Shown piece after piece: positions 3,216 through 40,255 of a stretch of 64,000 bases of DNA (positions are counted from its first letter, which is position 1; each line of letters opens with the position of its first letter). The position numbers were made by a program, and so were the translations under genes. The notes under the pieces were generated by a model. It worked only from the letters and a program-made list of their open reading frames with translations, was not told where the DNA came from and did not search any database. Location of the stretch: IMG/VR virus record IMGVR_UViG_3300042465_005589, positions 124,001 through 188,000 of that record. One strand, 5' to 3'.

Positions 3216-4502
3216 TTAATTACTTAAAGGTGCTTTAATTGTTGGATGTGATTGATAGTTCTCTAACGTAAAATCTCCTATATCATATGTAAATATCCCA
3301 CCACCAATTCTCATTTTGTTATTGGGGTTAATTGTTATATTTGGTAACTCATAAGGTTCTCTTGTTGTATAAGGAATTTTATACGAATCATAATATTCGC
3401 TTAATCCACCGCCAAACGGCATTAATTCATCAACCGCTTTATTATAATTTTCTTCACCCATCGCTTGTTTTAACAATTCTGTTCTTTCTTCGTGAGTATA
3501 TTTTCTTCCAATTTGTTCTTTAGCTGCATCAATATGATTTGAATATAAATGGACATCCCCTAAATTTCCAATCAACTGGTCAGGAACCATATTAACTTCT
3601 TTTGCAATTATCACCAATAACAATCCATATGAAGCAATGTTGAATGGTAAACCTAAGAATGTATCTACTGAACGTTGATTCCACATTAAAGAGATTGCTC
3701 TGGTTGGTATGTTTAATTCATCTAAAACATCAGATGTTATTCTTTTATCAGGAGTCCAATCAAATTTTCTTTCATTTTTTAAAATGAAAATTTCAAATCT
3801 TTGGTCGTAACTTAATTCTCTTGTATAAACTTGAAATCCATAATGACAAGGTGGAAGAACCATTTGGTCTAATTCTCCAACATTCCAAGCATTAACCATT
3901 AATCGTCTTGAGTCTGGGTTTGTTTTAAGGTCGTTGATTAGGTTTTGGATTTGGTCTATTCCATTTTTTAATCGAAATATTTCATTTACTGTGTAACTAC
4001 TTATAAAGTTTTCAATTGTATGCGGCACTAGAATATCTTTACCACCCCAATTTCTCCATTGCTTACCATAAATTGGACCTAACTCACCCCACTTATTAGC
4101 AAACTCATCATCTGTTTTGATTTTGTTAATGAAAATTGTTTGTGTCATAATTTCATCAGAACCAGTTTTAGTTCCGATAAATCCACCATTAACACTTGAA
4201 ATTGGAAACCAATCTGAATTAAATAAATAATTCTTATAAGCATCACCATTCCAAATATGACAATTATTATCAACCAAATACTTAATGTTGGTATCACCTC
4301 GAAGGAACCAAAGAAGTTCTGTGACGATTGATTTCCACGGCATCTTTTTGGTTGTAAGTAATGGGAATCCTTCTGACATTTTATGTCTGATTTGTCTTCC
4401 AAATACTGATATTGTCCCCGTCCCGGTTCTGTCTTTCTTTTCTATCCCGTTATCCAAGATATCTTGGAGTAAGTCTGTGTATGTTTTGTCTAATTTATTC
4501 AT
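3216..4502 (-). CDS. thyA: thymidylate synthase with insertions
   Basis: DRTGTGT, FPLLTTKK, ELLWFL, GPIYGKQWR, SRR, PPCHYGFQ, NQRSVDTFLGLPFNIASY, YQSHPTIKAPLSN. Confidence 0.97.
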   Translation of the reverse strand: MNKLDKTYTDLLQDILDNGIEKKDRTGTGTISVFGRQIRHKMSEGFPLLTTKKMPWKSIVTELLWFLRGDTNIKYLVDNNCHIWNGDAYKNYLFNSDWFPISSVNGGFIGTKTGSDEIMTQTIFINKIKTDDEFANKWGELGPIYGKQWRNWGGKDILVPHTIENFISSYTVNEIFRLKNGIDQIQNLINDLKTNPDSRRLMVNAWNVGELDQMVLPPCHYGFQVYTRELSYDQRFEIFILKNERKFDWTPDKRITSDVLDELNIPTRAISLMWNQRSVDTFLGLPFNIASYGLLLVIIAKEVNMVPDQLIGNLGDVHLYSNHIDAAKEQIGRKYTHEERTELLKQAMGEENYNKAVDELMPFGGGLSEYYDSYKIPYTTREPYELPNITINPNNKMRIGGGIFTYDIGDFTLENYQSHPTIKAPLSN

Positions 4503-5803: not shown

Positions 5804-5981
5804 TTGTGTGTTTTATTATTAATCTGTTTATTTTTCCTATTTTATTAAAACTATCCGCCCATTCTGCGTGGGTCTTTGGCTCACCAAAAACATCCAAATA
5901 TATTTCTTTGGACAAAGATAAGGTTTTAGAATAAGATTTCCAATTACTTTCTAATTTTTTATCCATTTGTGTGTAAATCAT
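5784..5981 (-). CDS. hypothetical protein
   Basis: MIYTQMDKKL...; the ATG coincides with the truncated end of the repeat array. Confidence 0.6.
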   Translation of the reverse strand: MIYTQMDKKLESNWKSYSKTLSLSKEIYLDVFGEPKTHAEWADSFNKIGKINRLIIKHTNGEIRE

Positions 5982-6693
5982 AGTGTTCCTCCACCTGTTC
6001 TTGTATACGCCAACCAAACTCCTGTATTGATGTTACACCCATTTTGTAGTGTTCCTCCACCTTAAATGGTAAATCATATTTAAAAAATAGTGTTGATGTT
6101 ACCCCCACTTTGTAGTGTTCCTCCACCGTGTGGTTCCAACATTTCCTGGATTCAATGGTTGTTGTTACCCCCACTTTGTAATGTTCCTCCACCCCATTGA
6201 TATAACCATACATACTGCCTGAAGTTGATATTACCCCCACTTTGTAGTGTTCCTCCACCTCCAAAGAAGCTTCTTTAATAAGTAATTCTGTTGATGTTAC
6301 CCCCACTTTGTAGTGTTCCTCCACCCAATGGAGATTGTGGTCCGCCTTGGCAATAGTTGATGTTACCCCCACTTTGTAGTGTTCCTCCACCCTTGGGGTA
6401 AGATAGTTGTTCTCAACCAACGTTGATGTTACCCCCACTTTGTAGTGTTCCTCCACCCATATCTTTGTGATGTCCTTAATTTGTTGGTTAGACATACTAA
6501 AATAGGATTCAAAAAACTTCCATATTTCTCTATAACTCACATAAACATACCCATTTTTTTTATTGTGTTGCAAGATACATCTCCCATCTTTCATATGAAA
6601 GATATAATCAGGGTATTCTTTCATAATGAATGGTTCCATAGGGTTAAAATTCGCATTCAACCACTTGATACAAAGTTTTTCTAATTTAGTCAT
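5959..6693 (-). CDS. repeat-spacer protein: ~80-aa family domain followed by 7 units of VEEHYKVGVTST + 10 variable residues
   Basis: Likely start MTKLEKL at 6693. The N-terminal domain resembles many paralogs in the window and the frame stays open through all spacers. Confidence 0.85.
   Translation of the reverse strand: MTKLEKLCIKWLNANFNPMEPFIMKEYPDYIFHMKDGRCILQHNKKNGYVYVSYREIWKFFESYFSMSNQQIKDITKIWVEEHYKVGVTSTLVENNYLTPRVEEHYKVGVTSTIAKADHNLHWVEEHYKVGVTSTELLIKEASLEVEEHYKVGVISTSGSMYGYINGVEEHYKVGVTTTIESRKCWNHTVEEHYKVGVTSTLFFKYDLPFKVEEHYKMGVTSIQEFGWRIQEQVEEHYDLHTNG
5981..6457 (+). repeat. 36-nt direct repeats with unique 30-nt spacers, period exactly 66 nt
   Basis: Consensus GTTGATGTTACCCCCACTTTGTAGTGTTCCTCCACC at 6026 (3 mismatches), 6092 (0), 6158 (2), 6224 (1), 6290 (0), 6356 (0), 6422 (0); 15-nt partial at 5981. 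Confidence 0.98.
5981..6457 (+). CRISPR. putative cas-less CRISPR-like mini-array embedded antisense in a CDS
   Basis: 36+30 geometry as in Bacteroidota II-C/VI-B arrays, GTTG start, 7 unrelated spacers, polarised decay. Against: no cas genes in window, a weak repeat hairpin, and full in-frame coding. Confidence 0.4.
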
Positions 6694-9621: not shown

Positions 9622-9846
9622 ATGGGAAAACCAAGTTCAAAAGGAAAGTATGTTGTTAAAGCGAATCTTTACGACATTTATGTATTAGCAACGTCAAGAC
9701 CGGACACAACAAAAAAACACGGGTATTCAATGGGTTTTGATTTCCGAATCTATAAAAATGGAAAACTTGTTGAGAAAGGATTAAAATCTAAAGATGCTGC
9801 CGTTGCCAAAGCATTAACATTAGTTCCAAAAAAACAAAAAGCATAA
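9622..9846 (+). CDS. small basic hypothetical protein
   Basis: Likely start MGKPSSKGK after the promoter at 9584. Confidence 0.75.
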   Translation: MGKPSSKGKYVVKANLYDIYVLATSRPDTTKKHGYSMGFDFRIYKNGKLVEKGLKSKDAAVAKALTLVPKKQKA

Positions 9847-10580
9847 TGAATTACGGAAGAGAGTTTCAAAAGTTCGCAATGAGCGAAAGAGGGGTTTCAA
9901 GTCTTAACTTAGATTACTACCAAAAACATATTGAGAGTGTTACCCCATATATCTTGGAAGAAAGAGAGATGAGAGCAACTCAACTTGATATCTTTTCTCG
10001 ACTTATGATGGACCGAATTATTTGGGTTTCAGGACCGGTTGAGAGTCAGATGGCATCTATTATCCAAGCACAACTTATCTTCTTGGAAACGACCGATAAA
10101 AAGGATATCAGTATGTATCTTGACACACCGGGAGGTTCCGTATTGTCAGGTCTTGGAATCCGAGATACTATGAACTACATCAAACCGGATGTTGCAACAT
10201 TAAATGTTGGAATGTGTGCGTCTATGGGTTCTGTGTTAGTATCTTCAGGAACAAAAGGAAAAAGAAGTTCATTAATCTTCTCAAAGATTATGACACATAT
10301 GGTGTCTCACGGAACACAAGGAAATGTTCAGGACACTCGTATTAACCAATTCGAGGCAGAGAAATATAACTATATGTTATTCAAAATCTTGGCAGAGAAC
10401 TGCGGGAAAACATTTGATGAGATGTATGAGTCATCAAGAAATGACAAATGGTTCAACTCGGATGAGGCAAAATCATTTGGTTTAATTGACAACATCGTTG
10501 GATTAGAGACAAACAAATCTATGACAGAAATGATGGTTGGGTTTGATGAGTTCTACACTAAAGAAATCTTAAAACGATAA
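9846..10580 (+). CDS. clpP: ATP-dependent Clp protease proteolytic subunit
   Basis: DIFSRLMMDRII, YLDTPGGSV, GMCASMG (Ser), MTH (His), DKWFNSDEA (Asp); Bacteroidota-type N-terminal extension. Confidence 0.95.
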   Translation: MNYGREFQKFAMSERGVSSLNLDYYQKHIESVTPYILEEREMRATQLDIFSRLMMDRIIWVSGPVESQMASIIQAQLIFLETTDKKDISMYLDTPGGSVLSGLGIRDTMNYIKPDVATLNVGMCASMGSVLVSSGTKGKRSSLIFSKIMTHMVSHGTQGNVQDTRINQFEAEKYNYMLFKILAENCGKTFDEMYESSRNDKWFNSDEAKSFGLIDNIVGLETNKSMTEMMVGFDEFYTKEILKR

Positions 10581-13096: not shown

Positions 13097-13513
13097 TTAT
13101 TTTAAAATTGTTTTTACACGAATGTGAAAATTATCTTCAAACCATTTTTTGAACGGTTCTTCCCATCTGTCACCAAAAATACTATCTAATTGATTTGATA
13201 AATGAGTATTCTCAAATTCAAGTATTGGGGAATCTTTAATATTTTTTTTTAATTGATGGCGGTCATACTCATGTCCTGTTGGTGGCAAAGCACTCTCATC
13301 TTCAATCCAATATTCTTTATCATACCATCTAAATAAAGTATTCTCGCCCCACCCTTCTTCATAATCACCTTCATAGAATTCCACAGCGTAATCAACCTCA
13401 TTACCCATATCGTCAGAACCAGGTGTCCAACCAATATTATTAACATCAAACATATTGTTAAGATGTTTAACGACTAAGTCATTAATTTTATTTTCAGTTA
13501 TAATAAATTTCAT
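13097..13513 (-). CDS. leader-bearing member of the expanded paralog family
   Basis: Start MKFIITENK at 13513; ends FKKWFEDNFHIRVKTI. Confidence 0.8.
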   Translation of the reverse strand: MKFIITENKINDLVVKHLNNMFDVNNIGWTPGSDDMGNEVDYAVEFYEGDYEEGWGENTLFRWYDKEYWIEDESALPPTGHEYDRHQLKKNIKDSPILEFENTHLSNQLDSIFGDRWEEPFKKWFEDNFHIRVKTILK

Positions 13514-13608
13514 ATCAATAAATATTTGATTTTCCATTATAAAACAAAAAATCACCAATTAAGGTGATTATTTTCCACTAAAACAGATATTTTAGTCATT
13601 ATTTTCCA

Positions 13609-15484: not shown

Positions 15485-15877
15485 CTATTCTTCATTTTTA
15501 AAATGTAGTCCCGCCTTACCAAACGACCAAGAGGTTAAATCAATCCCCATATATTTCAAATCATCTACCATTTCAGGTTCAAAAGCCCAATTTAACGGGT
15601 ATTTTTTTGCAACGGAATTTTTAAAATGTTTTTCTTTATACTCATCACATAACTCTACAGGAATTGGAACTTCAGAATCAATTACAAGTATGTAATCGTA
15701 TTTATCCCTCCAACTATCGGCAAACTTCCAACGTTCCTCACCTTTATATAAATTAACAATATGAACACTGAAGTTATACTTCGTGTCGGAACAAGTCATT
15801 TTATTTATCCTCTTATTACCAAACGTGTTCATATATTTGGTAATCATTCTAGGGACTGCTTCGTCTTCTATATTCAT
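15485..15877 (-). CDS. hypothetical protein
   Basis: 130-aa ORF. Confidence 0.75.
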   Translation of the reverse strand: MNIEDEAVPRMITKYMNTFGNKRINKMTCSDTKYNFSVHIVNLYKGEERWKFADSWRDKYDYILVIDSEVPIPVELCDEYKEKHFKNSVAKKYPLNWAFEPEMVDDLKYMGIDLTSWSFGKAGLHFKNEE

Positions 15878-16248
15878 TATATCCTTTCAATTGTTTTAAC
15901 ATTATAACCGTATACCTTTTCAAACCAATCTTTTAATAACTCATCAAAATATTGACTAAACATAGATTCTATATTTGGGAATGAATAATGTTCTCCGTAT
16001 CGTAGTATTGGTAAATCTTCTTCTTCACCCTCATCACCCGGTTCACTTTGATATTGCATAACCCAATCGTCATCTTCGTAATCTTCTTCAATATCATTAT
16101 AAAAATTCAAAACATCCCAATCAACATAATCTCCTTTTTCTTGAACCCAATAATCATAAGATTTTTCGGTGTGGTCTAAATTTGAATAGGGTTGCATTAC
16201 TTTATCAAAGATAGAGAACAACTTATCATATTTAATTTTAATATCCAT
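15877..16248 (-). CDS. member of the expanded paralog family
   Basis: Likely start MDIKIKY at 16248; ends KDWFEKVYGYNVKTI. Confidence 0.75.
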   Translation of the reverse strand: MDIKIKYDKLFSIFDKVMQPYSNLDHTEKSYDYWVQEKGDYVDWDVLNFYNDIEEDYEDDDWVMQYQSEPGDEGEEEDLPILRYGEHYSFPNIESMFSQYFDELLKDWFEKVYGYNVKTIERI

Positions 16249-16249
16249 A

Positions 16250-16621
16250 TTACCAAGTTCTGCAAGCCCAATATTTAGCTTTCCATCTTGGTCCCGGATT
16301 ATCACAATTCATTCTTGCTCTAAAAGATTTTCTTCTAGCAGGATTATTTTTCTTAATGACCATTCGTTTTCCTTTTGCAGATTTTCCACCAAAACCAAAG
16401 TTAACCTTAACAACATTTCCTTTGTCGTTCTTAACATAAACTTTGAATTTCTTAATATCTCCTTGCATAATTTTACCAAGTTGAACTTTACGTCCCTGAT
16501 ATTCCGCCTCAGTCAACAAATCACCAACAACAAAGTTGGTCTCCTCAACTGAACCATAAAAACTATCATCTAATTCATTGAATAGTCTATTGTATTGTGA
16601 TTCTGTAATTATTATTTTCAT
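16250..16621 (-). CDS. leader-bearing basic protein of a family common in T4-like aquatic phages
   Basis: MKIIITESQY; EAEYQGRKVQLGK...KKFKVYVKN...NPARRKSFRARMNC...KYWACRTW. Confidence 0.75.
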   Translation of the reverse strand: MKIIITESQYNRLFNELDDSFYGSVEETNFVVGDLLTEAEYQGRKVQLGKIMQGDIKKFKVYVKNDKGNVVKVNFGFGGKSAKGKRMVIKKNNPARRKSFRARMNCDNPGPRWKAKYWACRTW

Positions 16622-17497: not shown

Positions 17498-17740
17498 TTA
17501 TTTAAGTTCTACATTAAATTTATTGGAGAACCATTTATGTAATTGAGGGTAGTATGTTCCGTCACCAAACCAACCATTTAAATCTGAATGAACCTCACCT
17601 GCAAATCCAACTTGTTTACTGATTTTATAATATATACAAACACCACCAATACTCATAGAATTTTCTAAATCACACATCTCTCTATCACCATAGGTAAGTT
17701 CCAAATATTTGATAATTAACTCTTCTTTTTTAGGATTCAC
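17498..17740 (-). CDS. member of the expanded paralog family (no leader)
   Basis: KEELIIKYLE...HKWFSNKFNVELK. Confidence 0.75.
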   Translation of the reverse strand: MNPKKEELIIKYLELTYGDREMCDLENSMSIGGVCIYYKISKQVGFAGEVHSDLNGWFGDGTYYPQLHKWFSNKFNVELK

Positions 17741-18016: not shown

Positions 18017-18442
18017 TTATATTTGAATTGGTAATAATCTCTCAGGTAAGTATTGTTCCGGACATACGATGGTAACGCTTTCAATATAATACGGATACTT
18101 CAATAAGTAATCCATTGACATTTTAGAAGTATCTCTATAATTCAAAACTATATACGGAGTGGTTACTTTATTATCAATTTTGATTCTAACCTTTTCAAAA
18201 TCAAATTGCATAAAACGATATTCCCCATTAACATCCCCCATAAGTTTTACAACTGTATTGGTTTCAGTATTTGAATTAACCGAACCGGCAATCAAAAAGA
18301 ACGAACCCGATGTATGGGTTTGTGTGATATCCCGGTTAACCAACTGTCTTAAATAAATTTTATCACTATGTAAATCTTTATATTCAATTGGTTGACACCC
18401 AATCATAAACAACACCACTAATAACCCTAATACTTTTTTCAT
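18017..18442 (-). CDS. putative lipoprotein
   Basis: Start MKKVLGLLVVLFMIGC (lipobox), downstream of the promoter at 18459. Confidence 0.75.
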   Translation of the reverse strand: MKKVLGLLVVLFMIGCQPIEYKDLHSDKIYLRQLVNRDITQTHTSGSFFLIAGSVNSNTETNTVVKLMGDVNGEYRFMQFDFEKVRIKIDNKVTTPYIVLNYRDTSKMSMDYLLKYPYYIESVTIVCPEQYLPERLLPIQI

Positions 18443-18511
18443 CTCTATTATTTTTTCACAAAGATACAAATAATATTTGAAACTATCCAAAAAAAATATT
18501 ATATTTGTTAT

Positions 18512-19918
18512 ATGAAAAATGCAATTAATTTATTAATGGAAAAGTGGATTAAAGGTGTGGATACATATACCCACAATGGTTCTACTTGGTTAATATTTAC
18601 CGATTCCAAAAAATGGGTAATTGAACTAACCGATTCTAAAACCCTATGGTATAACTACAACTTCTTCAAACAAATATTTGATTTCACTTCGTTGGATGTT
18701 GTGGAGAATCAATCATACATCACCAAATGGGTGGAAGATAATATTATCAATGGGGTAAACCATACCGGAGCACCTGATTGGAATAGAGATAAGGTTGCCA
18801 AATATGCAATTGAAAATGGTGTGAAGAACACCAAACAATCACATATAGATAACCGAATCCAAGAACGTGTTGAAGGTACCATTGAAAATGGGGTAAAGAA
18901 AACCAATTATAAATCTCTAGTGACAAGAGGTAATATTGAAGACATCATTGATGGCGGGGTTAAGGAAACTATTAGTACACTACGACGTACTCTTCTTGGG
19001 GTTGACGATATCATTCAAAATGGAATAAAAGAAACCCGTTTGGAAATGAACATTACTGAAGGAGAAGTTGATGACATCATTCAAGATGGGGTGAAACACA
19101 CCTTTGGTGATAAGTGGCATAAGCATAATTTTGTTGAAGACATAATTCAAAATGGTGTAAGAGATACACAGAGTAACCCGTATGAAAATACAAGTTGGAT
19201 TGAAGGTGTTATTAAAAAAGGTGTAAAACTTACCGGACGCATTCATAAAGATTATACTGAAGTTGTTGAATACCTTATTGAAAATGGTGTGAGGAAAACC
19301 TATCACGACACAGATAACTATACTGACGATGTGAAAGAAGTCATTAGAGAAGGTGTGAAAGAAACAAAGGAGATGTTGGATTGGGTTTGTACCGACCGAA
19401 TGTTATCTAATGTTCTTGAAAATGGTGTGAGAACTTCCCACCCACGTGCATATGTAGATGAAAAAATGATTGATAAGGTGATTGATAAGGGTGTAATAGA
19501 AACCCACGATGATGTATATCACCACAAAGGAAGAATTGATGGTGTGATTAAGAATGGTATTAAAGAAACGTTGAAAGCATCATATCTTAATGTTGATGAT
19601 GTAATTCAAGATGGTGTTAAAGAAACAAAAACACCCGGTGATTGTGACCTTGTATCAACCATTGAATGGATGAATGAAAATAATACCAGTAATGTTCCCA
19701 TAATGATTGATGATGTTATTGAGAATGGTGTTAAAGAAACTGTGGCAGCCGGATGTGTTGACAAAAAGACGGGTATTTTTCATTATCGGATTCAAGAACA
19801 AGTTGATGATGTTGTTGACAATGGTGAAAAAGTTAACGGAACTTACGCTGGCGGTCAACGTCAAAGTGAAAAATGTAAATCCGTTGTTGAATATGGAACA
19901 AAAAACCCCACCGATTAG
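18512..19918 (+). CDS. repeat-spacer protein: family domain followed by 17 units of VxxxIxNGVKET + ~10 variable residues
   Basis: 10 of 16 linkers are exactly 10 aa and all differ; own promoter (18500) and terminator (19900). Confidence 0.9.
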   Translation: MKNAINLLMEKWIKGVDTYTHNGSTWLIFTDSKKWVIELTDSKTLWYNYNFFKQIFDFTSLDVVENQSYITKWVEDNIINGVNHTGAPDWNRDKVAKYAIENGVKNTKQSHIDNRIQERVEGTIENGVKKTNYKSLVTRGNIEDIIDGGVKETISTLRRTLLGVDDIIQNGIKETRLEMNITEGEVDDIIQDGVKHTFGDKWHKHNFVEDIIQNGVRDTQSNPYENTSWIEGVIKKGVKLTGRIHKDYTEVVEYLIENGVRKTYHDTDNYTDDVKEVIREGVKETKEMLDWVCTDRMLSNVLENGVRTSHPRAYVDEKMIDKVIDKGVIETHDDVYHHKGRIDGVIKNGIKETLKASYLNVDDVIQDGVKETKTPGDCDLVSTIEWMNENNTSNVPIMIDDVIENGVKETVAAGCVDKKTGIFHYRIQEQVDDVVDNGEKVNGTYAGGQRQSEKCKSVVEYGTKNPTD

Positions 19919-19929
19919 GATGGGGTTTT
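19900..19929. terminator. bidirectional intrinsic terminator containing the stop codon of the 468-aa gene
   Basis: AAAAAACCCCA-CCGATTAGGA-TGGGGTTTT. Confidence 0.75.
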
Positions 19930-19932
19930 AAA

Positions 19933-20391
19933 TTATATTTCTTCTCCGAAAATATCATCGGTCCAATTCTCGGGAATCATTACAATAATATATCCTTGTC
20001 TAACTTCAATTAATGATTCCGGAACCACACCATTAAGTTGTTCCATTATTTCAGGTCGTTCTTTAAAAACAACTCTCAACTTACCATCAGGAGCAGTATC
20101 AACAACTTTGTGGTTAAACCCATCCATAATTTCCTTGAATTTATCAAGTCCTCCGAAATCTTCAGATTCTTCAGAATCAATATCCAATTCACCACCCAAA
20201 AATCTTTCAGGTACATTACTCTCACCACCACTCTTTAAATATTTAATTTCTTCATCAGTCATACCCTCAAGTCCAACCTCATTATATAAATCTAAAATAA
20301 TATCGTAGTAGTCATAATCAAATTGTTCATCCAAAAGTTTTAACACAATTTTTTTTAAATCCGATTCCGTTAATTTTATAATCTTTTTCAT
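19933..20391 (-). CDS. leader-bearing acidic protein
   Basis: MKKIIKLTESDLKKIVLKLLDEQ. Confidence 0.8.
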   Translation of the reverse strand: MKKIIKLTESDLKKIVLKLLDEQFDYDYYDIILDLYNEVGLEGMTDEEIKYLKSGGESNVPERFLGGELDIDSEESEDFGGLDKFKEIMDGFNHKVVDTAPDGKLRVVFKERPEIMEQLNGVVPESLIEVRQGYIIVMIPENWTDDIFGEEI

Positions 20392-22322: not shown

Positions 22323-22640
22323 TTACACACATTCCTTATCGTAAATACCTTGTAGATAATCGGCAAAATTATCTACCATAAAATAATACAAAGTATCTTT
22401 GGTTTTAGAATCAATCTTTCCGCCGTTTTCATAATAGTAATCATCAATTAAATCCAATACCAGCATATCACACATTTCACCAATAAAATCACCCAAACTT
22501 CCATAATCACAAGGATTATAATTCTGTATAACAAAATCTAAATGACCTTTAATTTCGTCATAATTAAACCTTCTACGAAGTGATGCCGGGATATTCTCCA
22601 TTAACAAGTTATGCTGTCTTTCAGTGATTATAATTTTCAT
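22323..22640 (-). CDS. leader-bearing protein (PCDY subfamily)
   Basis: MKIIITERQH...LRRR...NPCDY; similar to the N-terminal module of 16618-17457. Confidence 0.8.
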   Translation of the reverse strand: MKIIITERQHNLLMENIPASLRRRFNYDEIKGHLDFVIQNYNPCDYGSLGDFIGEMCDMLVLDLIDDYYYENGGKIDSKTKDTLYYFMVDNFADYLQGIYDKECV

Positions 22641-22999
22641 TCCTCAACAAATTCCTCAATTAATTTATTCAAACTTATTCCCAACATATCAAGACCAAGT
22701 ATTTTTAAAAAATTATTTTCGCTAATTTTACGATTGTGAGATTCACTTAAAACTAAGGTACCATATTCTTTACCTTGAGGGTGAAGATAATAATTATTTC
22801 CATTAACCTTAAACAAATACATTGGACCATAATTATTAAGTAACCACCTAAACTCATCTCTACCATCAGTAAACAAGTTTTGACCTTTAGGACCTAATTC
22901 AATCCAATTTGTAATTATTTCAATATTGTCGGATAAGTTATAACCCAATATATTATTGATTAACCCTTTTAATCTGTTTTCTGTTATTATTATTTTCAT
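22637..22999 (-). CDS. leader-bearing protein, paralog of 27999-28373
   Basis: MKIIITENRL...NNILGYNLSDNIEIITN...LLNNYGPMYL. Confidence 0.8.
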   Translation of the reverse strand: MKIIITENRLKGLINNILGYNLSDNIEIITNWIELGPKGQNLFTDGRDEFRWLLNNYGPMYLFKVNGNNYYLHPQGKEYGTLVLSESHNRKISENNFLKILGLDMLGISLNKLIEEFVEE

Positions 23000-23340
23000 A
23001 ATTCTTCCTCCACTCTTTTCCACCACCAGGGGTTATCGTCTCTCGCCGAAACATTATTTGAATGTAAACCATATTCCTCCAATAACCATTTTTTTAATAT
23101 TGTTTGAACATCAGAAAAATCTAATCCAAATATTTTGGTTAACCCACTCCATATATTAAACACATCAACATACACATTAGTGTTTGTTAAATGATAGTCA
23201 ATCATTACCTTACCGTCTTTAACATAGAAAAGACGAGTTGGGTTGGATTCGCTTGTAACCGAAGGTAACCCTCCAAATTTATCGGTCAACCATTTTAGGA
23301 CCAATCTATGTAATCTATCTTCAGTAATTATCATTCTCAT
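22996..23340 (-). CDS. leader-bearing family domain with a single spacer-like tail
   Basis: Ends KKWLLEEYGLHSNNV-SARDDNPWWWKR-VEEEL. Confidence 0.8.
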   Translation of the reverse strand: MRMIITEDRLHRLVLKWLTDKFGGLPSVTSESNPTRLFYVKDGKVMIDYHLTNTNVYVDVFNIWSGLTKIFGLDFSDVQTILKKWLLEEYGLHSNNVSARDDNPWWWKRVEEEL

Positions 23341-23341
23341 A

Positions 23342-23659
23342 TTAATTTAATCTTCTAGTAAAAAAAGTTGATTTTAATGCTGACGGTTCATTAAATTTAA
23401 TTGAAACATATTCTTTACAGATATCCACCAAATCAGGTATAGACATCCCTAACATATTTTTAGCGGTATAAAAATCATCGTAGTCAAATCGTATTGATTC
23501 TTGTTTGGTATCATATTCAAAAGCGGTACGACCATTATCATCCATATATTCATATAGAACGTGAGGATACCCCATACGTATCGGTCGTCTCCCGTGTTTC
23601 TCATAACCCCTAAAGGTCATATCAAAATATTTAAAGATGAGTTCTTTCTTTCTGTTCAT
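23342..23659 (-). CDS. member of the expanded paralog family
   Basis: KKELIFKYFD...YMDDNGRTAFEYD. Confidence 0.75.
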   Translation of the reverse strand: MNRKKELIFKYFDMTFRGYEKHGRRPIRMGYPHVLYEYMDDNGRTAFEYDTKQESIRFDYDDFYTAKNMLGMSIPDLVDICKEYVSIKFNEPSALKSTFFTRRLN

Positions 23660-33914: not shown

Positions 33915-34337
33915 TTACTTATTGATTAATATCTCAACCAATTCATCAAGTATTTGCCCCGGCAAACTTTCATATGGAATATTATAATCACCTAAATGAG
34001 TACCCATATCCTCATCATAAACATCTACCATAGCTCGGTTCTTACCCAAATATTCTATTTGACGTAATTCACCATCCTGTTCACTAAAATGAATTGGTTC
34101 TTCATTTATCTCGTGTAAAGCAAAACCACTACCATCATCATTTATTTCTATAATTTTCTCTTTAATATAATTTACTTTGTCAATTTCCTTTAAGTATGGC
34201 TCAATCACATAGTAATTCCCCGTCATTTTAATGGCGTCAGCAACACCCATCTTGTCAATCATATTTCTGATGGCTTTATCCCTGTCATTTTCAGAGATTA
34301 AGGTATTAATTCTTTGTATGTTTTCTATTAAGTTCAT
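33915..34337 (-). CDS. MNL.EN-leader protein
   Basis: MNLIENIQRINTLISEN; LRQIEYL...VDVYD. Confidence 0.8.
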   Translation of the reverse strand: MNLIENIQRINTLISENDRDKAIRNMIDKMGVADAIKMTGNYYVIEPYLKEIDKVNYIKEKIIEINDDGSGFALHEINEEPIHFSEQDGELRQIEYLGKNRAMVDVYDEDMGTHLGDYNIPYESLPGQILDELVEILINK

Positions 34338-35095
34338 TATCCAATATTTGCTCCGGTTATTTGTCTAACCCCATATTCAGGGAAATGTTTCTTAAAGTAG
34401 TCCTGAACCGCATACCTGTAATGTCTTGACACATATCCAAAAGGAACAAATTGAACTAACTCATCATGTAATGAATAGTCCCACCATATTTGTTCGTCCT
34501 TTTTATCGTATCTCATTAAAGTTTTTTTAAGGTCTTTATCATTAAACAATATAATTACATTATCATTCTCATCATACGCGTTTATTGCCATATCTAAAAA
34601 CTTAACCATAGTTTTCCCCCACTTTGGATATTCATCTTCATACTCTTGGTCAAAAGAAGCTCTTGAAACATAAGCGTCTTTACCCTCGCTCATCATATGT
34701 TTAAACACTTGTTTAATATGTTTTGGTAAGGAATTAATCGGTATTACTTTTGCTCTAATTGTTTCTAATCCTTGTCTTGCGGCTTTCTGTGCTCTGTGGT
34801 GCCCATCTATAATCGTTATGAACTCCCCATCATCATTAACAAAGATTAATATTGGATATTGTAAGTCAGCGCTTTCTATCTTTCTAACCTCATCTTCATC
34901 CCCATCCCACGATAATAAGTGTGACTTTAATTCTTCTACAGATATTTTCCTCACCGGAATATCTTCTGTGGCGTTTAATAAATCAATAAGGGTGATTTTA
35001 TCCCCCTCGTCATTTTCCCAAGATGTATCATGCAACCCTTCATTGATTACCCCCATCATCTGATGGATTCTATGTATGTTCTCTTGTAAGTTCAT
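34337..35095 (-). CDS. MNL.EN-leader protein with ParB/Srx-like domain and C-terminal family domain
   Basis: ADLQYPILI...IIDGHHRAQKA. Confidence 0.75.
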   Translation of the reverse strand: MNLQENIHRIHQMMGVINEGLHDTSWENDEGDKITLIDLLNATEDIPVRKISVEELKSHLLSWDGDEDEVRKIESADLQYPILIFVNDDGEFITIIDGHHRAQKAARQGLETIRAKVIPINSLPKHIKQVFKHMMSEGKDAYVSRASFDQEYEDEYPKWGKTMVKFLDMAINAYDENDNVIILFNDKDLKKTLMRYDKKDEQIWWDYSLHDELVQFVPFGYVSRHYRYAVQDYFKKHFPEYGVRQITGANIG

Positions 35096-36388: not shown

Positions 36389-36503
36389 GATTACACTTTT
36401 TGGTACGAATAAATGTAATAGATAACACTTTTTGGTACGAATAAATGTAAATGTCCGTTATTACAAACATTATTATTGTTTTTGATTAGAATAACGGACA
36501 TTT
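36389..36503. repeat. tandem 30-nt direct repeat (period 32) followed by a perfect 14-bp inverted repeat
   Basis: GATWACACTTTTTGGTACGAATAAATGTAA at 36389 and 36421; AAATGTCCGTTATT (36449) / AATAACGGACATTT (36490). Confidence 0.85.
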
Positions 36504-36837
36504 AATCCTCATTGTGATACCCCATCAAATATACTTCTTCGGGTTCTAACCTTATTCTATCTTTAAACCACCAAAAAATAACTCTTTGTAGTTCTTCCTC
36601 ACCAAATGAGAAAACCGATAGAGGTAACCAAAAATCCCTATAAACATATAATCCCCCATTATTCTCTAACCATTTCAATATAATTTTACCATCACTATCT
36701 TTGAATAACACTCGGTGATTACTAAACACTGAATTTACATTCATATCTTTATCTTCACGTGTTAATTTACTCAAGACATTATCTAATACCTTATAGGATA
36801 ATTGTCTTCTTTTATCTTCTGTAAGAAGTACTCTCAT
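36502..36837 (-). CDS. leader-bearing family-domain protein
   Basis: MRVLLTEDK; FKDSDGKII...FWWFKDRIRLEP. Confidence 0.8.
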   Translation of the reverse strand: MRVLLTEDKRRQLSYKVLDNVLSKLTREDKDMNVNSVFSNHRVLFKDSDGKIILKWLENNGGLYVYRDFWLPLSVFSFGEEELQRVIFWWFKDRIRLEPEEVYLMGYHNED

Positions 36838-37223
36838 ATATAATCATTAGTTATTTGAGCAACATTTAATCCTGTGTTTTCTTCAAACCATTCCTTAAAT
36901 ACCGGTAACCATCTATCACCAAATAAAGATGTTAGTTCTTGACCAACTCTCGGATATATAGATAGTAAAGGACATTTATAATTATGTAAGTGACCATAAC
37001 CAGCAAAGAATTCATCTTCCGGACCAGCATTTGCGTTACACCCATAGTAAATGTAGCTATCAGCATCATCTATAAAGAAAACAATATCACCCCACTTATC
37101 AACATCTCTTTGATATGAACCGTGTCTTGTATTTTCATTCCACCCATAATCCGGATAAAATTCTTTGTCTAAATACTTACGTATAATCTGATTAACTTTA
37201 TTTTCTGATATAATTACTTTCAT
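36834..37223 (-). CDS. leader-bearing family-domain protein
   Basis: MKVIISENK; FGDRWLPVFKEWFEENTGLNV. Confidence 0.8.
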   Translation of the reverse strand: MKVIISENKVNQIIRKYLDKEFYPDYGWNENTRHGSYQRDVDKWGDIVFFIDDADSYIYYGCNANAGPEDEFFAGYGHLHNYKCPLLSIYPRVGQELTSLFGDRWLPVFKEWFEENTGLNVAQITNDYI

Positions 37224-37831
37224 TCTTTTATAATTCTAAATCTCAATAATGGTTTACCATTAATTGTGATGTCACCTTTATCATTTTTTTCTATTGTCTT
37301 AACAATAACTTTTTTGTTTTTAAATTTACCCCCCATTAGAGTATCACCAACTTTAATATCTAACTTAATCATTTCACTTAATGTTAATTCTTCTTCATCA
37401 TGATGATTCCAAGTATCACCACCTGTTCCTTTGTATATTAATCTAACGGCATTCGCCGGAATATCCCCAAAGGTAACGATATGTTTAGTATCACCACCCT
37501 CAAAATGAGCGTCTTTATACCATTGCACACCAGCTCTTTCAGTATCAATCACCCATATGTCATCATCATAAGTTGAATCAAACATATCTTTCTTCTTTAA
37601 ACTATCTGTTGCAAACACAGCAGGAATACATTCTTCATCTTCACCATAATTACTATCGGCATAAATCAAATAACATTCCCCCAAAGATACCTGAAGACCT
37701 GTAGTTGAAATATTATCTCTATTTGATGGATTTGATGAATGAACAATAAATCTTCCGGGAGTAATCTCTTCCCCCTTCACTCGTTGTTCTTGTAGTTTTC
37801 TATATTGTGTTTCTGTTATAATTACTTTCAT
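37220..37831 (-). CDS. leader-bearing ADP-ribosyltransferase-fold-like protein
   Basis: FIVHSS...NISTTGL...PAVFAT...YDDDIWVIDT...GDIPANAVRLI; extra C-terminal module IKVGDTLMGGKFKNK. Confidence 0.55.
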   Translation of the reverse strand: MKVIITETQYRKLQEQRVKGEEITPGRFIVHSSNPSNRDNISTTGLQVSLGECYLIYADSNYGEDEECIPAVFATDSLKKKDMFDSTYDDDIWVIDTERAGVQWYKDAHFEGGDTKHIVTFGDIPANAVRLIYKGTGGDTWNHHDEEELTLSEMIKLDIKVGDTLMGGKFKNKKVIVKTIEKNDKGDITINGKPLLRFRIIKE

Positions 37832-38139
37832 TAGTCCCTTACCATTTTAACTTCCATACCCCAACTTGCACCATATGTATTAATATAAAGACCAAACATT
37901 GAATTAATATCATTTCTTATTTGTCTAGCCATATAACTTGGACTATGTGTCATCTTACCATCAATGAAGTCAATGTTTAGTATATTTCTAACAATATCAT
38001 TCTCACCTTTTTCATTTGGTTCACCGGCTAAACGAATTAACTTTGTTGTAAAAAACACCCTTTTAACCATAGGATATCCTTTAAGAATATATTTCTCAAT
38101 TGAACTATTTAACCTATTTTCTGTGATTATTACTTTCAT
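37831..38139 (-). CDS. leader-bearing hypothetical protein
   Basis: MKVIITENRL. Confidence 0.8.
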   Translation of the reverse strand: MKVIITENRLNSSIEKYILKGYPMVKRVFFTTKLIRLAGEPNEKGENDIVRNILNIDFIDGKMTHSPSYMARQIRNDINSMFGLYINTYGASWGMEVKMVRD

Positions 38140-38732
38140 TATGTACCTATATTATTCAATCGTGCGTTATAAACACTTCTGTAGTCAGATTTTAGTTTAT
38201 CATCAGGTAATTCTTCCAATTCACTTCTTCTTTTTAATGTTTGAGTATCTAAATAATCAATCATATATTCTCTACTCAACTTATCAGTATCAACCATCTC
38301 ATAACATTTACGAGGGTCATCAGTTTCCAAAGTTTCATAAATTTCAAATTCCGGATGACCGGTCTCTTGTCCAAATTTGGGTGTGTATCTATCATCATAC
38401 CATTCGGTTATCACATTATAAATAAATGTCTTTCTAACCTGTAACATTTTGGATAAAAACTCAATCTCCTCCGCATCAACATACAAATCACCTGTGAAAA
38501 ATTCATCAGTTTCATCATCAATATGATATCTGGCTTCAATAACTTTCTTACCACCTTTACACCACTCTTCAATAAAGATACCATAGTTATCTTCAGGTGG
38601 TGGAATAATTCTTTTTGAATTGGAGATTATACTCTCCATATGTTTAATAATAATACGTTCAAAGTTCGGATTAGATTTTGTAAATCTCTTCTGAACTTCC
38701 TCTCGTAATATTTTTCTAATTAAATTTTTCAT
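38139..38732 (-). CDS. leader-bearing hypothetical protein
   Basis: MKNLIRKILREE. Confidence 0.8.
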   Translation of the reverse strand: MKNLIRKILREEVQKRFTKSNPNFERIIIKHMESIISNSKRIIPPPEDNYGIFIEEWCKGGKKVIEARYHIDDETDEFFTGDLYVDAEEIEFLSKMLQVRKTFIYNVITEWYDDRYTPKFGQETGHPEFEIYETLETDDPRKCYEMVDTDKLSREYMIDYLDTQTLKRRSELEELPDDKLKSDYRSVYNARLNNIGT

Positions 38733-38733
38733 A

Positions 38734-39063
38734 TTAGTTTAATATATGTTTATTTACGTGATGAACTTTTTCAACCGGTAACTCAAAAAACTCCGAGAAC
38801 CATTTACCAACTAACCTTTTTACTTCAGGTGGAGTATAACTAAAATATGTAATTGGTTTTACCACATCTTCACAAATATATAACGTTTTATTTCTATCAC
38901 CATAAAGCATAATAACACCATCACCATTACGAAATTCGATTTTTTTTTGTTCTCCAACACTATCTGTCATATAACTAACATCTTCATACATATTAGAGAA
39001 GGCTTTATCTAATTCTTTTTTAGCTAATTGGTCTCTTCGGCTTTCTATTATCAAAATCTTCAT
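38734..39063 (-). CDS. leader-bearing family-domain protein
   Basis: Start MKILIIESR; GKWFSEFFELPVEKV. Confidence 0.8.
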   Translation of the reverse strand: MKILIIESRRDQLAKKELDKAFSNMYEDVSYMTDSVGEQKKIEFRNGDGVIMLYGDRNKTLYICEDVVKPITYFSYTPPEVKRLVGKWFSEFFELPVEKVHHVNKHILN

Positions 39064-39114
39064 ATTAATAAATATCATATAAATTAAAAACCCCCACGTT
39101 TGTGAGGGTTATTA

Positions 39115-39309
39115 TTATTGGATGTTGATTTCAGTATATTCTTCATCAGCACCATCATATTCTTCCTTTGTGGATTTGAGTAAGACGTAACCATTATCAG
39201 CAACATAGTCCAACACCGCCACCTCATTCTCTGTATCAATCTCCATAGCAATATATCCTACGAGCTCACCATCTATTGTCTCTATCTTCGCATAATTATA
39301 CTCTGACAT
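39115..39309 (-). CDS. small acidic protein
   Basis: 64-aa ORF. Confidence 0.7.
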   Translation of the reverse strand: MSEYNYAKIETIDGELVGYIAMEIDTENEVAVLDYVADNGYVLLKSTKEEYDGADEEYTEINIQ

Positions 39310-39646: not shown

Positions 39647-40255
39647 TTAATCTTTTAATCGTTCACCTGTTTCTTTAACTTTGAATTGTGATAGGTTGTT
39701 TGTACCACTACCACCTTTAACTCCCTTAACGAATTTTACCACTCCGTTATTATATAACTTGTTTGGTGTATCAAAATACTCCCCATTGAAGACCAACATC
39801 CCCTTTGTTGTTAGTATCACTTCATAATCATTCCCCAAATAAGTTCTGATTAATACTGTATCTTTACCAAATCCATTTGCCAAGTCAATTAATCTTGTGT
39901 CCGGAGTTGATTGTAACGATTCTCTCGATTCTTTAATCTCATTGATGTCACACACAACTCCACCATACGTATTCATAAAGTTAATGAACTCACCGGTTAA
40001 TGTGTCCTCATCATCTTTAAACCACTCACCAAATACTCTACGACTATCCAATATGGAATGTAACATCTTCTCAACTTTATTCATATCATCAACCTTATAC
40101 ACAGCAATGATTGAATAACCTATTGGTGACTTGGTCCTATTAAGTTGATATTCTCTCGATACAGGGTCTTTGGACAATCCAATTTTCTTATCCGATAATG
40201 TTAAGGTTCTACCCAACACATCGTAGTATTGACCTAAATAAATGTAACCTTCCAT
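39647..40255 (-). CDS. T5orf172 (GIY-YIG-like) nuclease with possible C-terminal RAMA-like domain
   Basis: GYIYL...KIGLSKDPVSREYQL...EKMLHSILDSRRVFGEWF; C-terminal FNGEYFDTPN...GTNN. Confidence 0.75.
   Translation of the reverse strand: MEGYIYLGQYYDVLGRTLTLSDKKIGLSKDPVSREYQLNRTKSPIGYSIIAVYKVDDMNKVEKMLHSILDSRRVFGEWFKDDEDTLTGEFINFMNTYGGVVCDINEIKESRESLQSTPDTRLIDLANGFGKDTVLIRTYLGNDYEVILTTKGMLVFNGEYFDTPNKLYNNGVVKFVKGVKGGSGTNNLSQFKVKETGERLKD

What the first reader, a model, noticed from the sequence alone, without database searches (positions are those of the whole stretch)
18512..19918. Older sister of the array gene: 17 units with the same 12-constant + 10-variable design
Seen: units such as VDDIIQNGIKET-RLEMNITEGE and VEDIIQNGVRDT-QSNPYENTSW. 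The constant part aligns with VEEHYKVGVTST (V, acidic, acidic, G-V, T). Ten of 16 linkers are exactly 10 aa and none repeat. DNA repeats have diverged, and irregular units cluster at the C-terminal end, the same polarity as at 5981-6457. A late linker ends in RIQEQ-V in both genes with different codons, which hints at protein-level selection or shared cassette ancestry. Inference: a solenoid displaying an array of variable loops, conceptually like lamprey VLRs, possibly binding host defence proteins or receptors.
Basis: partly seen in the sequence, partly recalled or inferred. Interest (0 to 1): 0.75.

Follow-up and report, generated by a model that had tools for sequence, protein, structure and literature searches.

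The report
Jumbo-phage protein built from reshuffled peptide cassettes
A real gene of a lake-water giant phage encodes a folded head domain followed by 17 units of 12 constant residues plus a variable stretch (10 residues in ten of 16). The variable pieces come from a shared pool of at least 246 conserved cassettes that related phages carry in different combinations, and the function is still unknown.

Summary
ORF 18512-19918 (+, 468 aa) has a 73-aa N-domain, 16 clear and one degenerate 12-aa constants, and 16 linkers, ten of exactly 10 aa. The linkers do not resemble one another.

It is not an assembly artefact. The gene is identical in two IMG/VR contigs (up to 318 kb) and is held by at least 20 lake metagenome runs.

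The family is large (510 clusters at 50% identity), found only on viral or metagenomic contigs, and has no informative Pfam, PHROG, NCBIfam or PDB match.

The "variable loops" are not hypervariable. They form a pool of at least 246 cassette types, each conserved (dN/dS 0.2-0.3), usually present once per protein, and reassorted between phages. Proteins whose N-domains are at least 95% identical share a median of only 37% of types. One near-clonal variant differs only by a cassette swap.

AlphaFold gives a confident N-domain but no solenoid (array pLDDT 31-45).

The N-domain belongs to a multigene family of small phage proteins with roughly 13-20 copies in this window. The constant repeats the end of that domain's last helix.

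The gene has a Bacteroidota-type promoter and its own terminator, unlike the putative late genes nearby. My best guess, at low confidence, is an early, non-virion host-interaction protein that presents peptide modules on a flexible chain.

The parts
18476..18479 (+). TTTG, upstream element of a Bacteroidota-type promoter, 20 nt before the -7 box
   Evidence: Read from the sequence. The same arrangement recurs before about a dozen operons in the window and before the gene in syntenic relatives.
18500..18507 (+). TATATTTG, matching the Bacteroidota -7 promoter box TAnnTTTG. It ends 4 nt before the ATG, so the mRNA would be leaderless or nearly so. No Shine-Dalgarno sequence is present.
   Evidence: The consensus itself is from my own knowledge of Bacteroides/Flavobacterium promoters.
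18512..19918 (+). Coding sequence, 468 aa, pI 5.2, net charge about -19, with no signal peptide visible on reading the N-terminus
   Evidence: Homologues show dN/dS of 0.16-0.47.
18512..18730 (+). N-terminal alpha/beta domain (residues 1-73). Its last helix runs on to residue 79, into the first constant.
   Evidence: AlphaFold2 pLDDT is 86-93 over residues 1-80. About 60 of 80 positions are at least 90% conserved across 121 proteins. It matches the stand-alone paralog profile and ESM Atlas/BFVD models of 105-122-aa phage proteins.
18731..19837 (+). Array of 16 clear units (residues 74-442). The constant consensus is V-E-D-[VIT]-I-Q-N-G-V-K-E-T. The 15 linkers between them are 7-26 aa long, ten of them 10 aa.
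   Evidence: All 15 linkers recur in 4 to 95 of the 121 related proteins.
19838..19915 (+). Conserved C-terminal tail (residues 443-468) holding a degenerate 17th constant
   Evidence: Conserved in the family consensus. It is retained even in a 144-aa relative with a single unit (P0409).
19570..19802 (+). A 233-nt segment (two units plus one cassette allele) that is replaced by 83 nt in a near-clonal relative
   Evidence: In L036 the flanks are 99.8% identical (1674 nt) and 100% identical (775 nt). The inner part has lost the LKASYLN and VAAG units and carries a KTPG cassette allele only 82% identical.
19902..19929 (.). GC-rich hairpin spanning the stop codon, with T-runs on both strands. Probably a bidirectional terminator shared with the convergent gene 19933-20391.
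   Evidence: Free energy -15.7 kcal/mol, z = -3.2, and no shuffle folds as well. Sequence.
5959..6693 (-). Sister array gene with the same family domain followed by 8 units of VEEHYKVGVTST plus 10 aa. The start at 6693 is taken from its homologues.
22996..23340 (-). Stand-alone paralog of the N-domain (114 aa), the best of 13-20 in the window. Others include 17498-17740, 23342-23659, 36502-36837, 36834-37223, 38734-39078 and 13097-13558.
   Evidence: E = 3.9e-16 with the sister N-domain HMM. The iterated profile gives E values of 1e-25 to 1e-7 with full-length coverage for about 13 ORFs.

Best explanation
The gene belongs to a large, phage-only family. A conserved ~75-aa alpha/beta head domain is followed by a chain of about 22-aa modules and a short conserved tail.

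Shown:
1. The head domain is a diverged member of a multigene family of ~105-116-aa phage proteins, present in roughly 13-20 copies in this window.
2. The constant 12-mer copies the end of that domain's last helix plus its N-G cap, so the array arose by tandem duplication of the domain's C-terminal end.
3. The evolutionary module is [K-x-T + linker + V-E-D-I-I-Q-N], and modules join at the invariant G-V.
4. Linkers fall into at least 246 types. Each type is conserved under purifying selection, is usually present once per protein, and has a preferred place along the array.
5. Relatives carry different subsets, from 1 to 27 units. Even near-identical phages differ by cassette loss or replacement.

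Inferred: new combinations arise by recombination between co-infecting relatives, with crossovers in shared cassettes or at the constant junction.

Inferred, with low confidence: the protein is made early, from a host-type promoter. It stays in the cell rather than in the virion. The head domain holds a conserved partner, while the array presents many short, individually functional peptide modules on a flexible chain. The set of modules would be tuned by selection from the host, for example as binding or decoy epitopes for host takeover or counter-defence.

I put about 0.9 on the anatomy and mode of evolution and about 0.3 on the function. The score given is a blend of the two.
For: Anatomy.

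Family size and absence of annotation: at least 1458 proteins at 90% clustering and 510 clusters at 50%. No informative Pfam, PHROG, NCBIfam or PDB hit. No relative in 185,579 bacterial and archaeal species genomes.

Cassette pool: 121 proteins carry 6-27 units, and 640 distinct linkers fall into 246 types. All 15 window linkers are shared with 4-95 other proteins. Unit order is the same in 376 of 520 type pairs and appears both ways in 144.

Preferred positions: median Kendall tau 0.81.

Module phase: a linker co-varies with positions 1-7 of the following constant (identity 0.69-0.88 against a background of 0.22-0.65) and with positions 10-12 of the preceding one. Each type has about 9 different right-hand neighbours.

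Selection: linker dN/dS is 0.22. It is 0.24-0.34 when pairs are chosen by nucleotide identity, against 0.99 for the same DNA read in the +1 frame. The N-domain gives 0.16 and the KTPG cassette 0.47.

Turnover: among proteins with N-domains at least 95% identical, the median Jaccard index of cassette types is 0.37, and only 5% have identical sets. L036 matches the window at 99.8-100% in the flanks but has a cassette swap bounded by constants.

Head-domain family.

Expression class: a TTTG-N20-TAnnTTTG promoter lies 4 nt before the ATG and is conserved in syntenic relatives. The endolysin-like gene and the LamG gene (PHROG family annotated 'virion structural protein') instead carry a TATATTTAT box. 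The gene has its own terminator.

Flexibility: array pLDDT is 31-50, and its charge-hydropathy value is borderline.
Against: No partner, no expression data and no virion proteome exist for any member, so the function is a guess from context.

The promoter classes are assigned by motif and by two marker genes only. Late genes of Bacteroidota phages might also use host-type promoters.

Low AlphaFold confidence does not prove disorder. A unit-shuffled alignment carries little covariation, and an obligate oligomer or a partner-induced fold would look the same. The linkers are rich in aromatic residues and histidine and are well conserved, which is unusual for disordered spacers.

Relatives with only 1-3 units exist, so a long array is not essential to the family.

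The dN/dS pairs were chosen by similarity, which biases the estimate, although the frame control argues that the signal is real.

Metagenome assemblies can mis-join repeats, so some unit orders in short contigs may be wrong.
Confidence: 0.4

Rival explanations
1. A virion-exposed fibre, whisker or decoration protein. The head domain would anchor it to the particle, and the array would form an oligomeric shaft whose variable segments contact host surfaces, as in tail-fibre adhesins with conserved motifs alternating with variable segments.
For: A conserved N-terminus with a variable remainder is the classic layout of phage fibres. Unit content changes fast between close relatives, as expected for host-range proteins. 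A LamG gene (PHROG family annotated 'virion structural protein') lies 550 nt downstream on the same strand. A monomer model cannot show an obligate oligomer.
Against: The promoter is of the host type, unlike the TATATTTAT box of the endolysin-like and LamG genes. The gene sits among small genes of unknown function, not in a structural module. Its head domain belongs to a family of 13-20 small stand-alone proteins in this window, which is not expected for structural parts. Both ends are conserved and it is the middle that varies. Versions with 1-3 units exist. There is no match to any fibre family.
Confidence: 0.13
2. A precursor or polyprotein that is cut at the constant parts to release many short peptides, in the manner of multi-core RiPP precursors or T4 prohead-core proteins cleaved at hydrophobic-x-Glu sites.
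For: The layout is a conserved leader-like head followed by repeated constant sequences that flank diverse, individually conserved short segments. Near-identical genomes differ only in cassettes. The constant contains V-K-E before T. A phage ClpP gene lies on the same strand 8 kb upstream and is syntenic in relatives.
Against: Pfam scans of 31 of the window's ORFs found no ATP-grasp, YcaO, radical SAM, cyclase or dedicated protease. Position 11 of the constant is Glu in only 51% of units. The head is a folded domain shared with stand-alone proteins. The long C-terminal cassettes are predicted to fold with pLDDT 73-83. Linkers show no enrichment of Cys, Ser or Thr.
Confidence: 0.08
3. A length-variable spacer or stalk in which only the two ends work. 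On this view the cassettes matter only as filler, and their reassortment is a neutral by-product of repeat recombination.
For: Unit number ranges from 1 to 27 while both ends stay conserved. The sister gene has near-identical DNA repeats typical of number-variable arrays.
Against: Linkers are under purifying selection as strong as the constants. They are 87% identical within a type across diverged phages. They keep preferred positions. Filler would drift.
Confidence: 0.12

Closest known systems
gp38-type adhesins of T-even phages (conserved glycine-rich motifs alternating with hypervariable segments), from my own knowledge: Trojet et al. 2011; Dunne et al. 2018
   Same: It is a phage protein in which short conserved motifs alternate with variable segments. 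The conserved motifs serve both as scaffold and as points for modular exchange between related phages.
   Different: gp38 is a late tail-fibre tip protein with a fixed number of Gly-rich motifs forming a polyglycine-II sandwich. Here the constant is a short helix plus an N-G cap, unit number varies from 1 to 27, the promoter is of the host type, there is no sequence or fold match, and the variable parts are conserved cassettes.
Lamprey variable lymphocyte receptors and other LRR arrays with variable positions, including the rearranged repeat families surveyed in PMC10392669
   Same: The period is about 22 residues, the design is constant plus variable, and diversity comes from combining cassettes.
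   Different: There is no LxxLxLxxN signature and no Pfam LRR hit. No solenoid is predicted. No flanking donor cassettes exist in 64 kb. The combinations differ between genomes and are not assembled within one.
Multi-core RiPP precursors such as the cyanobactin precursor PatE (own knowledge: Donia et al. 2006)
   Same: A conserved N-terminal part is followed by repeated constant sequences flanking diverse cassettes, and otherwise near-identical genomes differ only in the cassettes.
   Different: No maturation enzymes were found in the window. This protein is ten times larger, and its head is a folded domain of a stand-alone protein family.
Periscope proteins, bacterial surface stalks with variable repeat number (PMC9704523)
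   Same: Repeat number varies between strains while the ends stay constant. The sister gene at 5959-6693, with 93% identical DNA repeats, fits this pattern.
   Different: Periscope repeats are near-identical folded domains on cell surfaces. In the focal gene the repeats have diverged at the DNA level (65%) and each carries a different conserved insert.
An unnamed family of ~105-116-aa phage proteins that often begin M-K-I-I-I-T-E (ESM Atlas clusters of 53-71 members, all viral)
   Same: The N-domain matches by profile and by model (TM 0.55-0.58, rmsd 2.4 A over 78-80 residues). The array starts exactly at that family's C-terminal K-x-W-x-x-E motif.
   Different: Family members are single domains. 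Only this gene and the sister gene carry arrays. The focal head domain is the most diverged member and lacks the M-K-I-I-I-T-E start.

Membership tests
Unnamed small-domain phage multigene family (stand-alone ~105-116 aa) | Profile match over the whole ~90-position domain, ending in K-x-W-[VLF]-x-[ED] | tested here: met
   hhalign of the stand-alone profile against the focal N-domain gives Prob 74.9%, E 2.6e-5, over 77 columns. The iterated HMM gives E 8e-22, covering HMM positions 8-88. The direct N-domain HMM did not cross-hit, so the link is transitive.
Unnamed small-domain phage multigene family (stand-alone ~105-116 aa) | Same fold as the family's predicted models | tested here: met
   The AlphaFold2 N-domain (pLDDT 86-93) matches Atlas viral clusters of 110-117 aa at TM 0.55-0.58 and rmsd 2.4-2.9 A, and BFVD models at rmsd 2.3-2.4 A over about 79 residues. 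One of those clusters appears to be a feature match of the stand-alone paralog 22996-23340, judged by equal size and taxa. Both sides are predictions.
Leucine-rich repeat / VLR-type solenoid | LxxLxLxxN(C) motif in each repeat | tested here: not met
   The constant profile is V-E-D-[VIT]-I-Q-N-G-V-K-E-T. No LRR family appears in Pfam even at E <= 1.
Leucine-rich repeat / VLR-type solenoid | Curved solenoid fold with variable residues on one face | tested here: inconclusive
   AlphaFold2 gives array pLDDT 35-50 in the full-length model and 31.5 for a 6-unit segment with a 64-row alignment. No solenoid appears, but low confidence is not proof of absence.
Leucine-rich repeat / VLR-type solenoid | Store of donor cassettes near the gene for assembly by gene conversion | tested here: not met
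   No further constant 12-mer occurs in any frame of the 64 kb. blastn of the gene against the rest of the window finds only one 36-nt, out-of-frame match. The rest of the 318-kb genome was not searched.
T-even gp38-type adhesin | Glycine-rich conserved motifs; late tail-fibre gene context; sequence homology | tested here: not met
   The constant has a single Gly. There is no PHROG or Pfam fibre hit. The promoter is of the host type and no tail genes are adjacent.
Multi-core RiPP precursor | Maturation enzymes encoded beside the precursor | tested here: not met
   Pfam scans of 31 of the window's ORFs and of 8 neighbours in two relatives show none. Many ORFs were not scanned.
Multi-core RiPP precursor | Release of modified peptides from the cassettes | not testable with these tools
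   This needs mass spectrometry of infected cells.
Diversity-generating retroelement target | Template repeat copy of the variable region and a reverse transcriptase nearby; adenine-directed changes | tested here: not met
   There is no second DNA copy of the array in the window, and no reverse transcriptase among the scanned ORFs. Linker variants within a type are few and under purifying selection.
Number-variable identical tandem repeats (periscope-like) | Near-identical DNA repeats that expand and contract | tested here: not met
   The focal constants are 65% identical at the DNA level, with a median exact run of 6 nt. The sister gene meets this criterion at 93%.

The most novel reading that the evidence does not exclude
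These lake jumbo phages maintain a population-wide library of hundreds of short, individually functional peptide modules. By recombination at an invariant junction they reassort the modules into one early protein per genome. This would be a germline, exon-shuffling-like way to retune a multivalent host-interaction or counter-defence protein, built by repeatedly copying the last helix of a common phage domain.
Probability: 0.2. Interest if true: 0.8.

Novelty: new variant of a known kind. Interest (0 to 1): 0.6.

Why it matters
Proteins that pair a constant frame with exchangeable inserts have repeatedly turned out to be recognition systems, for example tail-fibre adhesins, VLRs and TALEs. This is a large, unannotated, phage-only family with that layout. 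The inserts form a finite, conserved and reassorted vocabulary rather than random variation, which points to many distinct targets or functions.

The family is abundant in well-sampled lakes, so its turnover can be followed in time series and linked to host populations.

It also gives a clear example of how a repeat array is born from the end of a folded domain. And it flags a multigene family (13-20 copies in 64 kb) that may make up a sizeable share of the unknown genes in these jumbo phages.

Tried and rejected
**Family and structure searches without an informative result**
- Pfam (only a sub-threshold DUF445 match, 25.5 bits against a cut-off of 33.8), PHROGs and NCBIfam.
- PDB sequences.
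- VIA-align against 48,161 PDB chains: best Z 5.0, short helical matches, treated as noise.
- AlphaFold DB clusters: only two 69-aa unnamed hits.
- INPHARED phages by DNA and by tblastn: no match.

**Structure prediction**
- A homotrimer of a 6-unit segment was sent to complex prediction. The verdict was 'no answer' (score 0.00, pLDDT 25-38). This counts neither for nor against oligomerisation.
- AlphaFold2 on the 6-unit segment gave pLDDT 31.5.

**Homology between the two array genes**
- Direct tests were weak. The focal N-domain HMM does not hit the sister gene. N-domain-only hhalign gives E 0.099. The whole-profile comparison gives Prob 15%.
- The link holds only through the stand-alone paralogs.

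**Donor cassettes or a DGR template**
- None found.
- The one 36-nt similarity, at 39138-39173, is out of frame with indels inside an unrelated small ORF and was dismissed.

**Metagenome contigs laid on the gene**
- Laying contigs from four lake runs showed the array broken into 200-500-nt pieces, with many joints between different units.
- This fits co-occurring relatives that share cassettes. But the joints have short sides and cannot be assigned to strains, so I do not use them as evidence of rearrangement within one population.

**Other checks**
- No tRNA or Rfam family in the window.
- The generic sigma-70 and terminator scan was uninformative.
- Nucleic-acid binding (TALE/PPR-like) was set aside because the protein is acidic (pI 5.2). 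DNA mimicry is not favoured, because the net charge of -19 over 468 aa is modest.
- Neighbour genes in distant relatives gave no Pfam clue.
- Motif text searches of the literature found nothing relevant.
Full report
**1.

ORF 18512-19918 on the + strand encodes 468 aa. A position matrix for the 12-residue constant (V-E-D-[VIT]-I-Q-N-G-V-K-E-T; Gly8 99%, Ile5 and Val9 76%, Lys10 74%, Thr12 72%) finds 16 non-overlapping copies between residues 74 and 442. It finds none elsewhere in any frame of the window. A degenerate 17th copy lies in the conserved tail.

Ten of the 16 linkers are exactly 10 aa. The long ones (26 and 20 aa) are at the C-terminal end.

Constants are 47% identical to one another and linkers 5.8%, no better than shuffled linkers (z = 0.63). 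The gene is not an assembly artefact. It is identical in two IMG/VR contigs of 157 and 318 kb from different samples, and at least 20 lake-water runs hold 94-100% of its sampled words.

**2. The genome**

The window has about 32% G+C and is densely packed with small genes, mostly on the - strand. Recognisable genes are:
- a thymidylate synthase;
- a ClpP whose nearest relatives are in 540-640-kb uncultured phages and Lak phages;
- a protein with a peptidoglycan-binding domain (endolysin-like);
- a LamG protein;
- a GT2 glycosyltransferase;
- a metallophosphatase;
- an SPFH protein.

Contigs carrying homologues reach 214-332 kb and keep the same gene order around the gene.

Many operons in the window are preceded by TTTG, about 20 nt, then TAnnTTTG. 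I recognise this as the Bacteroidota housekeeping promoter, from my own knowledge.

A 2025 paper describes freshwater 200-307-kb 'moraphages' with predicted Flavobacteriia hosts, related to Lak phages (PMC12619734). That is a plausible home for this phage, but I did not test membership.

**3. The family**

The protein has at least 1458 relatives at 90% clustering and 510 clusters at 50%. All come from metagenomes or viral contigs, and none is informatively named. No relative exists in 185,579 bacterial and archaeal species genomes or in deposited phage genomes. Pfam, PHROGs, NCBIfam and PDB sequence searches give nothing informative.

Across 121 aligned members the first 80 residues are almost invariant and the last ~30 are conserved. 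The middle cannot be aligned column by column.

**4. What the linkers really are**

I parsed all 121 proteins into units. This gives 6-27 units per protein (median 14), and a separate search found short members with 1-3 units. The 640 distinct linkers fall into 246 types at 60% identity or better.

- Sixty-four types occur in five or more proteins and 22 types in twenty or more.
- A type nearly always occurs once per protein.
- Every one of the window's 15 linkers recurs in 4 to 95 other proteins.
- Within a type, linkers are 87% identical.
- Across types, each position is close to maximal entropy, with only a weak excess of aromatic residues at positions 2 and 5.

Codon analysis of 20 distinct genes gives dN/dS 0.22 for linkers and 0.21 for the adjacent constants. 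When pairs are chosen by nucleotide identity instead, dN/dS is 0.24-0.34, against 0.99 for the same DNA read in the +1 frame.

So the linkers are conserved peptides, not hypervariable loops and not filler.

**5. How the arrays differ**

Types have preferred places along the array (median Kendall tau 0.81). Long cassettes are concentrated in the last quarter. But 144 of 520 type pairs occur in both orders, and a type has on average nine different right-hand neighbours.

Proteins whose head domains are at least 95% identical share a median of only 37% of their types, and 5% have the same set. One pair has identical head domains and shares 12%.

The clearest case is contig L036. It is 99.8% and 100% identical to the window over 1674 and 775 nt of flank. 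Between them, window 19570-19802 is replaced by 83 nt. Two units are removed and the KTPG cassette is exchanged for an allele 82% identical. Both edges lie at constants.

A linker co-varies with positions 1-7 of the constant after it and with positions 10-12 of the constant before it. The heritable module is therefore K-x-T + linker + V-E-D-I-I-Q-N, and modules meet at the invariant G-V.

Within this gene the constants share only short exact DNA runs (median 6 nt). New combinations therefore most likely arise by recombination between related phages that share whole cassettes. That step is inferred.

**6. Structure**

AlphaFold2 with the 121-row alignment models residues 1-80 confidently (pLDDT 86-93): a helix, four strands and two helices. 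The last helix runs into the first constant.

The array scores 35-50, with each constant drawn as a short helix ending at N-G. Only the 26-aa KTPG cassette and its neighbour reach 73-83. A 6-unit segment with its own 64-row alignment scores 31.5.

On a charge-hydropathy plot the array lies just on the disordered side and the head domain on the folded side.

There is thus no support for a solenoid, though the prediction cannot exclude a fold that needs partners or oligomerisation.

**7. Origin of the array and the sister gene**

The gene at 5959-6693 (-) has the same plan: an ~80-aa head and then 22-aa units with the constant VEEHYKVGVTST. Its family has 180 members, and these also share and lose cassettes.

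Direct comparison of the two head domains is not significant. However, the sister head-domain HMM finds stand-alone small proteins in the window (22996-23340 at E 3.9e-16; 36502-36837 at 9e-5).

A profile of nine such proteins matches the sister head at Prob 99.5% (E 6.6e-23). It matches the focal head at Prob 74.9% (E 2.6e-5) over its whole length.

Iterating that profile over the window and fetched loci recovers the focal gene (E about 1e-21), the sister gene (about 1e-20) and 17-18 more window ORFs. About 13 of these have full-length coverage. The weaker ones share mainly the N-terminal helix and could reflect profile drift.

Independently, the focal head model matches ESM Atlas and BFVD models of 105-122-aa phage proteins (TM 0.55-0.61, rmsd 2.3-2.4 A). 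One of those Atlas clusters appears also to be a feature match of the paralog 22996-23340, judged by equal size and taxa.

In the stand-alone proteins the domain ends with K-x-W-[VLF]-x-E-x-[YF]-x-[LV]. In both array genes this same motif is the start of the first constant. The arrays therefore arose by tandem duplication of the end of the domain's last helix plus the following tail.

The shared RIQEQV before the last constant is real (14 of 18 nt, all differences synonymous), but it is too short to prove anything.

**8. Expression context**

The gene stands alone on the + strand between - strand genes. A TATATTTG box ends 4 nt before its ATG, with TTTG 20 nt upstream. The same arrangement is conserved before the gene in syntenic relatives, although the surrounding spacer differs.

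The divergent neighbour (18017-18442), which reads as a lipoprotein, has its own copy of the box. A hairpin of -15.7 kcal/mol spans the stop codon and serves both convergent genes.

A second upstream motif, TATATTTAT next to the ATG, precedes the endolysin-like gene, the LamG gene (PHROG family annotated 'virion structural protein') and several large unknown genes. It recalls the T4 late promoter TATAAATA (own knowledge).

I read the first class as host-polymerase, early genes and the second as phage-directed, late genes. On that reading the array gene is early. This rests on motifs and two marker genes only.

**9. Interpretation**

Solid conclusions:
- This is a phage-only family built from a common small domain.
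- Its last helix end has been copied many times.
- Each copy is paired with a distinct conserved peptide.
- The set of copies is reassorted quickly among co-circulating phages.

The function is unknown. I favour an early intracellular role in which the head domain holds a conserved partner and the chain presents many short modules to host or phage proteins, with host pressure selecting the combination. The reasons are:
- the promoter class;
- the accessory-gene neighbourhood;
- membership in an expanded family of small proteins;
- the lack of any structural-protein signal;
- the apparent flexibility of the array.

I give this about 0.3. The rivals are a virion fibre or adhesin (0.13), a spacer of variable length (0.12) and a cleaved multi-peptide precursor (0.08). 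The remainder is unassigned.

**10. Novelty**

The constant-frame, variable-insert design and modular exchange are known from T-even gp38 adhesins, LRR/VLR systems, multi-core RiPP precursors and number-variable stalks. A published survey has searched for rearranged repeat families in general (PMC10392669).

I found no description of this family. It differs from each precedent in a tested feature.

I rate it a new variant of a known kind. It is of clear interest to phage biologists, but its function is still to be found.

Noticed in passing
window 13097-13558, 15877-16305, 17498-17740, 22637-23659, 34337-35095, 36502-39078 and others: A multigene family of small proteins, many beginning M-K-I-I-I-T-E, with roughly 13-20 copies in 64 kb, several in tandem runs. 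It has no Pfam or PHROG match, and all its ESM Atlas neighbours are unnamed viral clusters.
   Followed up: partly
window 5959-6693 (-): A second array gene with 8 units of VEEHYKVGVTST plus 10 aa. Its DNA repeats are 93% identical (66- and 198-nt periods by Tandem Repeats Finder). Its 180-member family also gains, loses and shares cassettes.
   Followed up: partly
window-wide, e.g. 18459-18466 (-), 18500-18507 (+), and upstream of 29042, 30893, 50162, 58829, 61532 and 62356: There are two classes of upstream motif. One is TTTG-N~20-TAnnTTTG (Bacteroidota-like), before operons of small genes. The other is TATATTTAT, a few nt before the ATG of the endolysin-like gene, the LamG gene and several large unknown genes, often just after a hairpin. 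Both lie so close to the start codon that the mRNAs would be nearly leaderless, and no Shine-Dalgarno sequences are seen.
   Followed up: partly
window 18017-18442 (-): The divergently transcribed neighbour begins with a lipoprotein-like signal (a hydrophobic stretch ending in a Cys). It could be an early envelope protein such as a superinfection-exclusion factor. It has only a weak PHROG hit.
   Followed up: no
window 3216-4502 (-): The thymidylate synthase is 428 aa and matches the 266-position Pfam model in two stretches, so it seems to carry an insertion of about 100-150 residues.
   Followed up: no
window 9846-10580 (+): A phage-encoded ClpP protease is 60% identical to one in a 635-kb uncultured phage and 44% identical to those of Prevotella Lak phages. 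It is syntenic with the array gene and on the same strand in relatives.
   Followed up: partly
window 19933-20391 (-): In three of the four lake runs laid, contigs carry a second allele of this gene with about 50-60 differences per 400-450 nt. Related strains therefore co-exist in the same samples.
   Followed up: no
L014 1162-2136 and 2140-4578; L016 2939-4000 (-) and 5962-7077; L011 5269-6696 and 6671-7051: Some relatives carry two genes of the focal family, in tandem or nearby.
   Followed up: no
window 39647-40255 (-): A protein with a T5orf172/MUG113 domain (GIY-YIG-like), possibly a homing endonuclease.
   Followed up: no
window 36389-36450: A 32-nt direct repeat, 1.9 copies at 96% identity, lies in the gap just upstream of the tandem run of small-family genes.
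   Followed up: no
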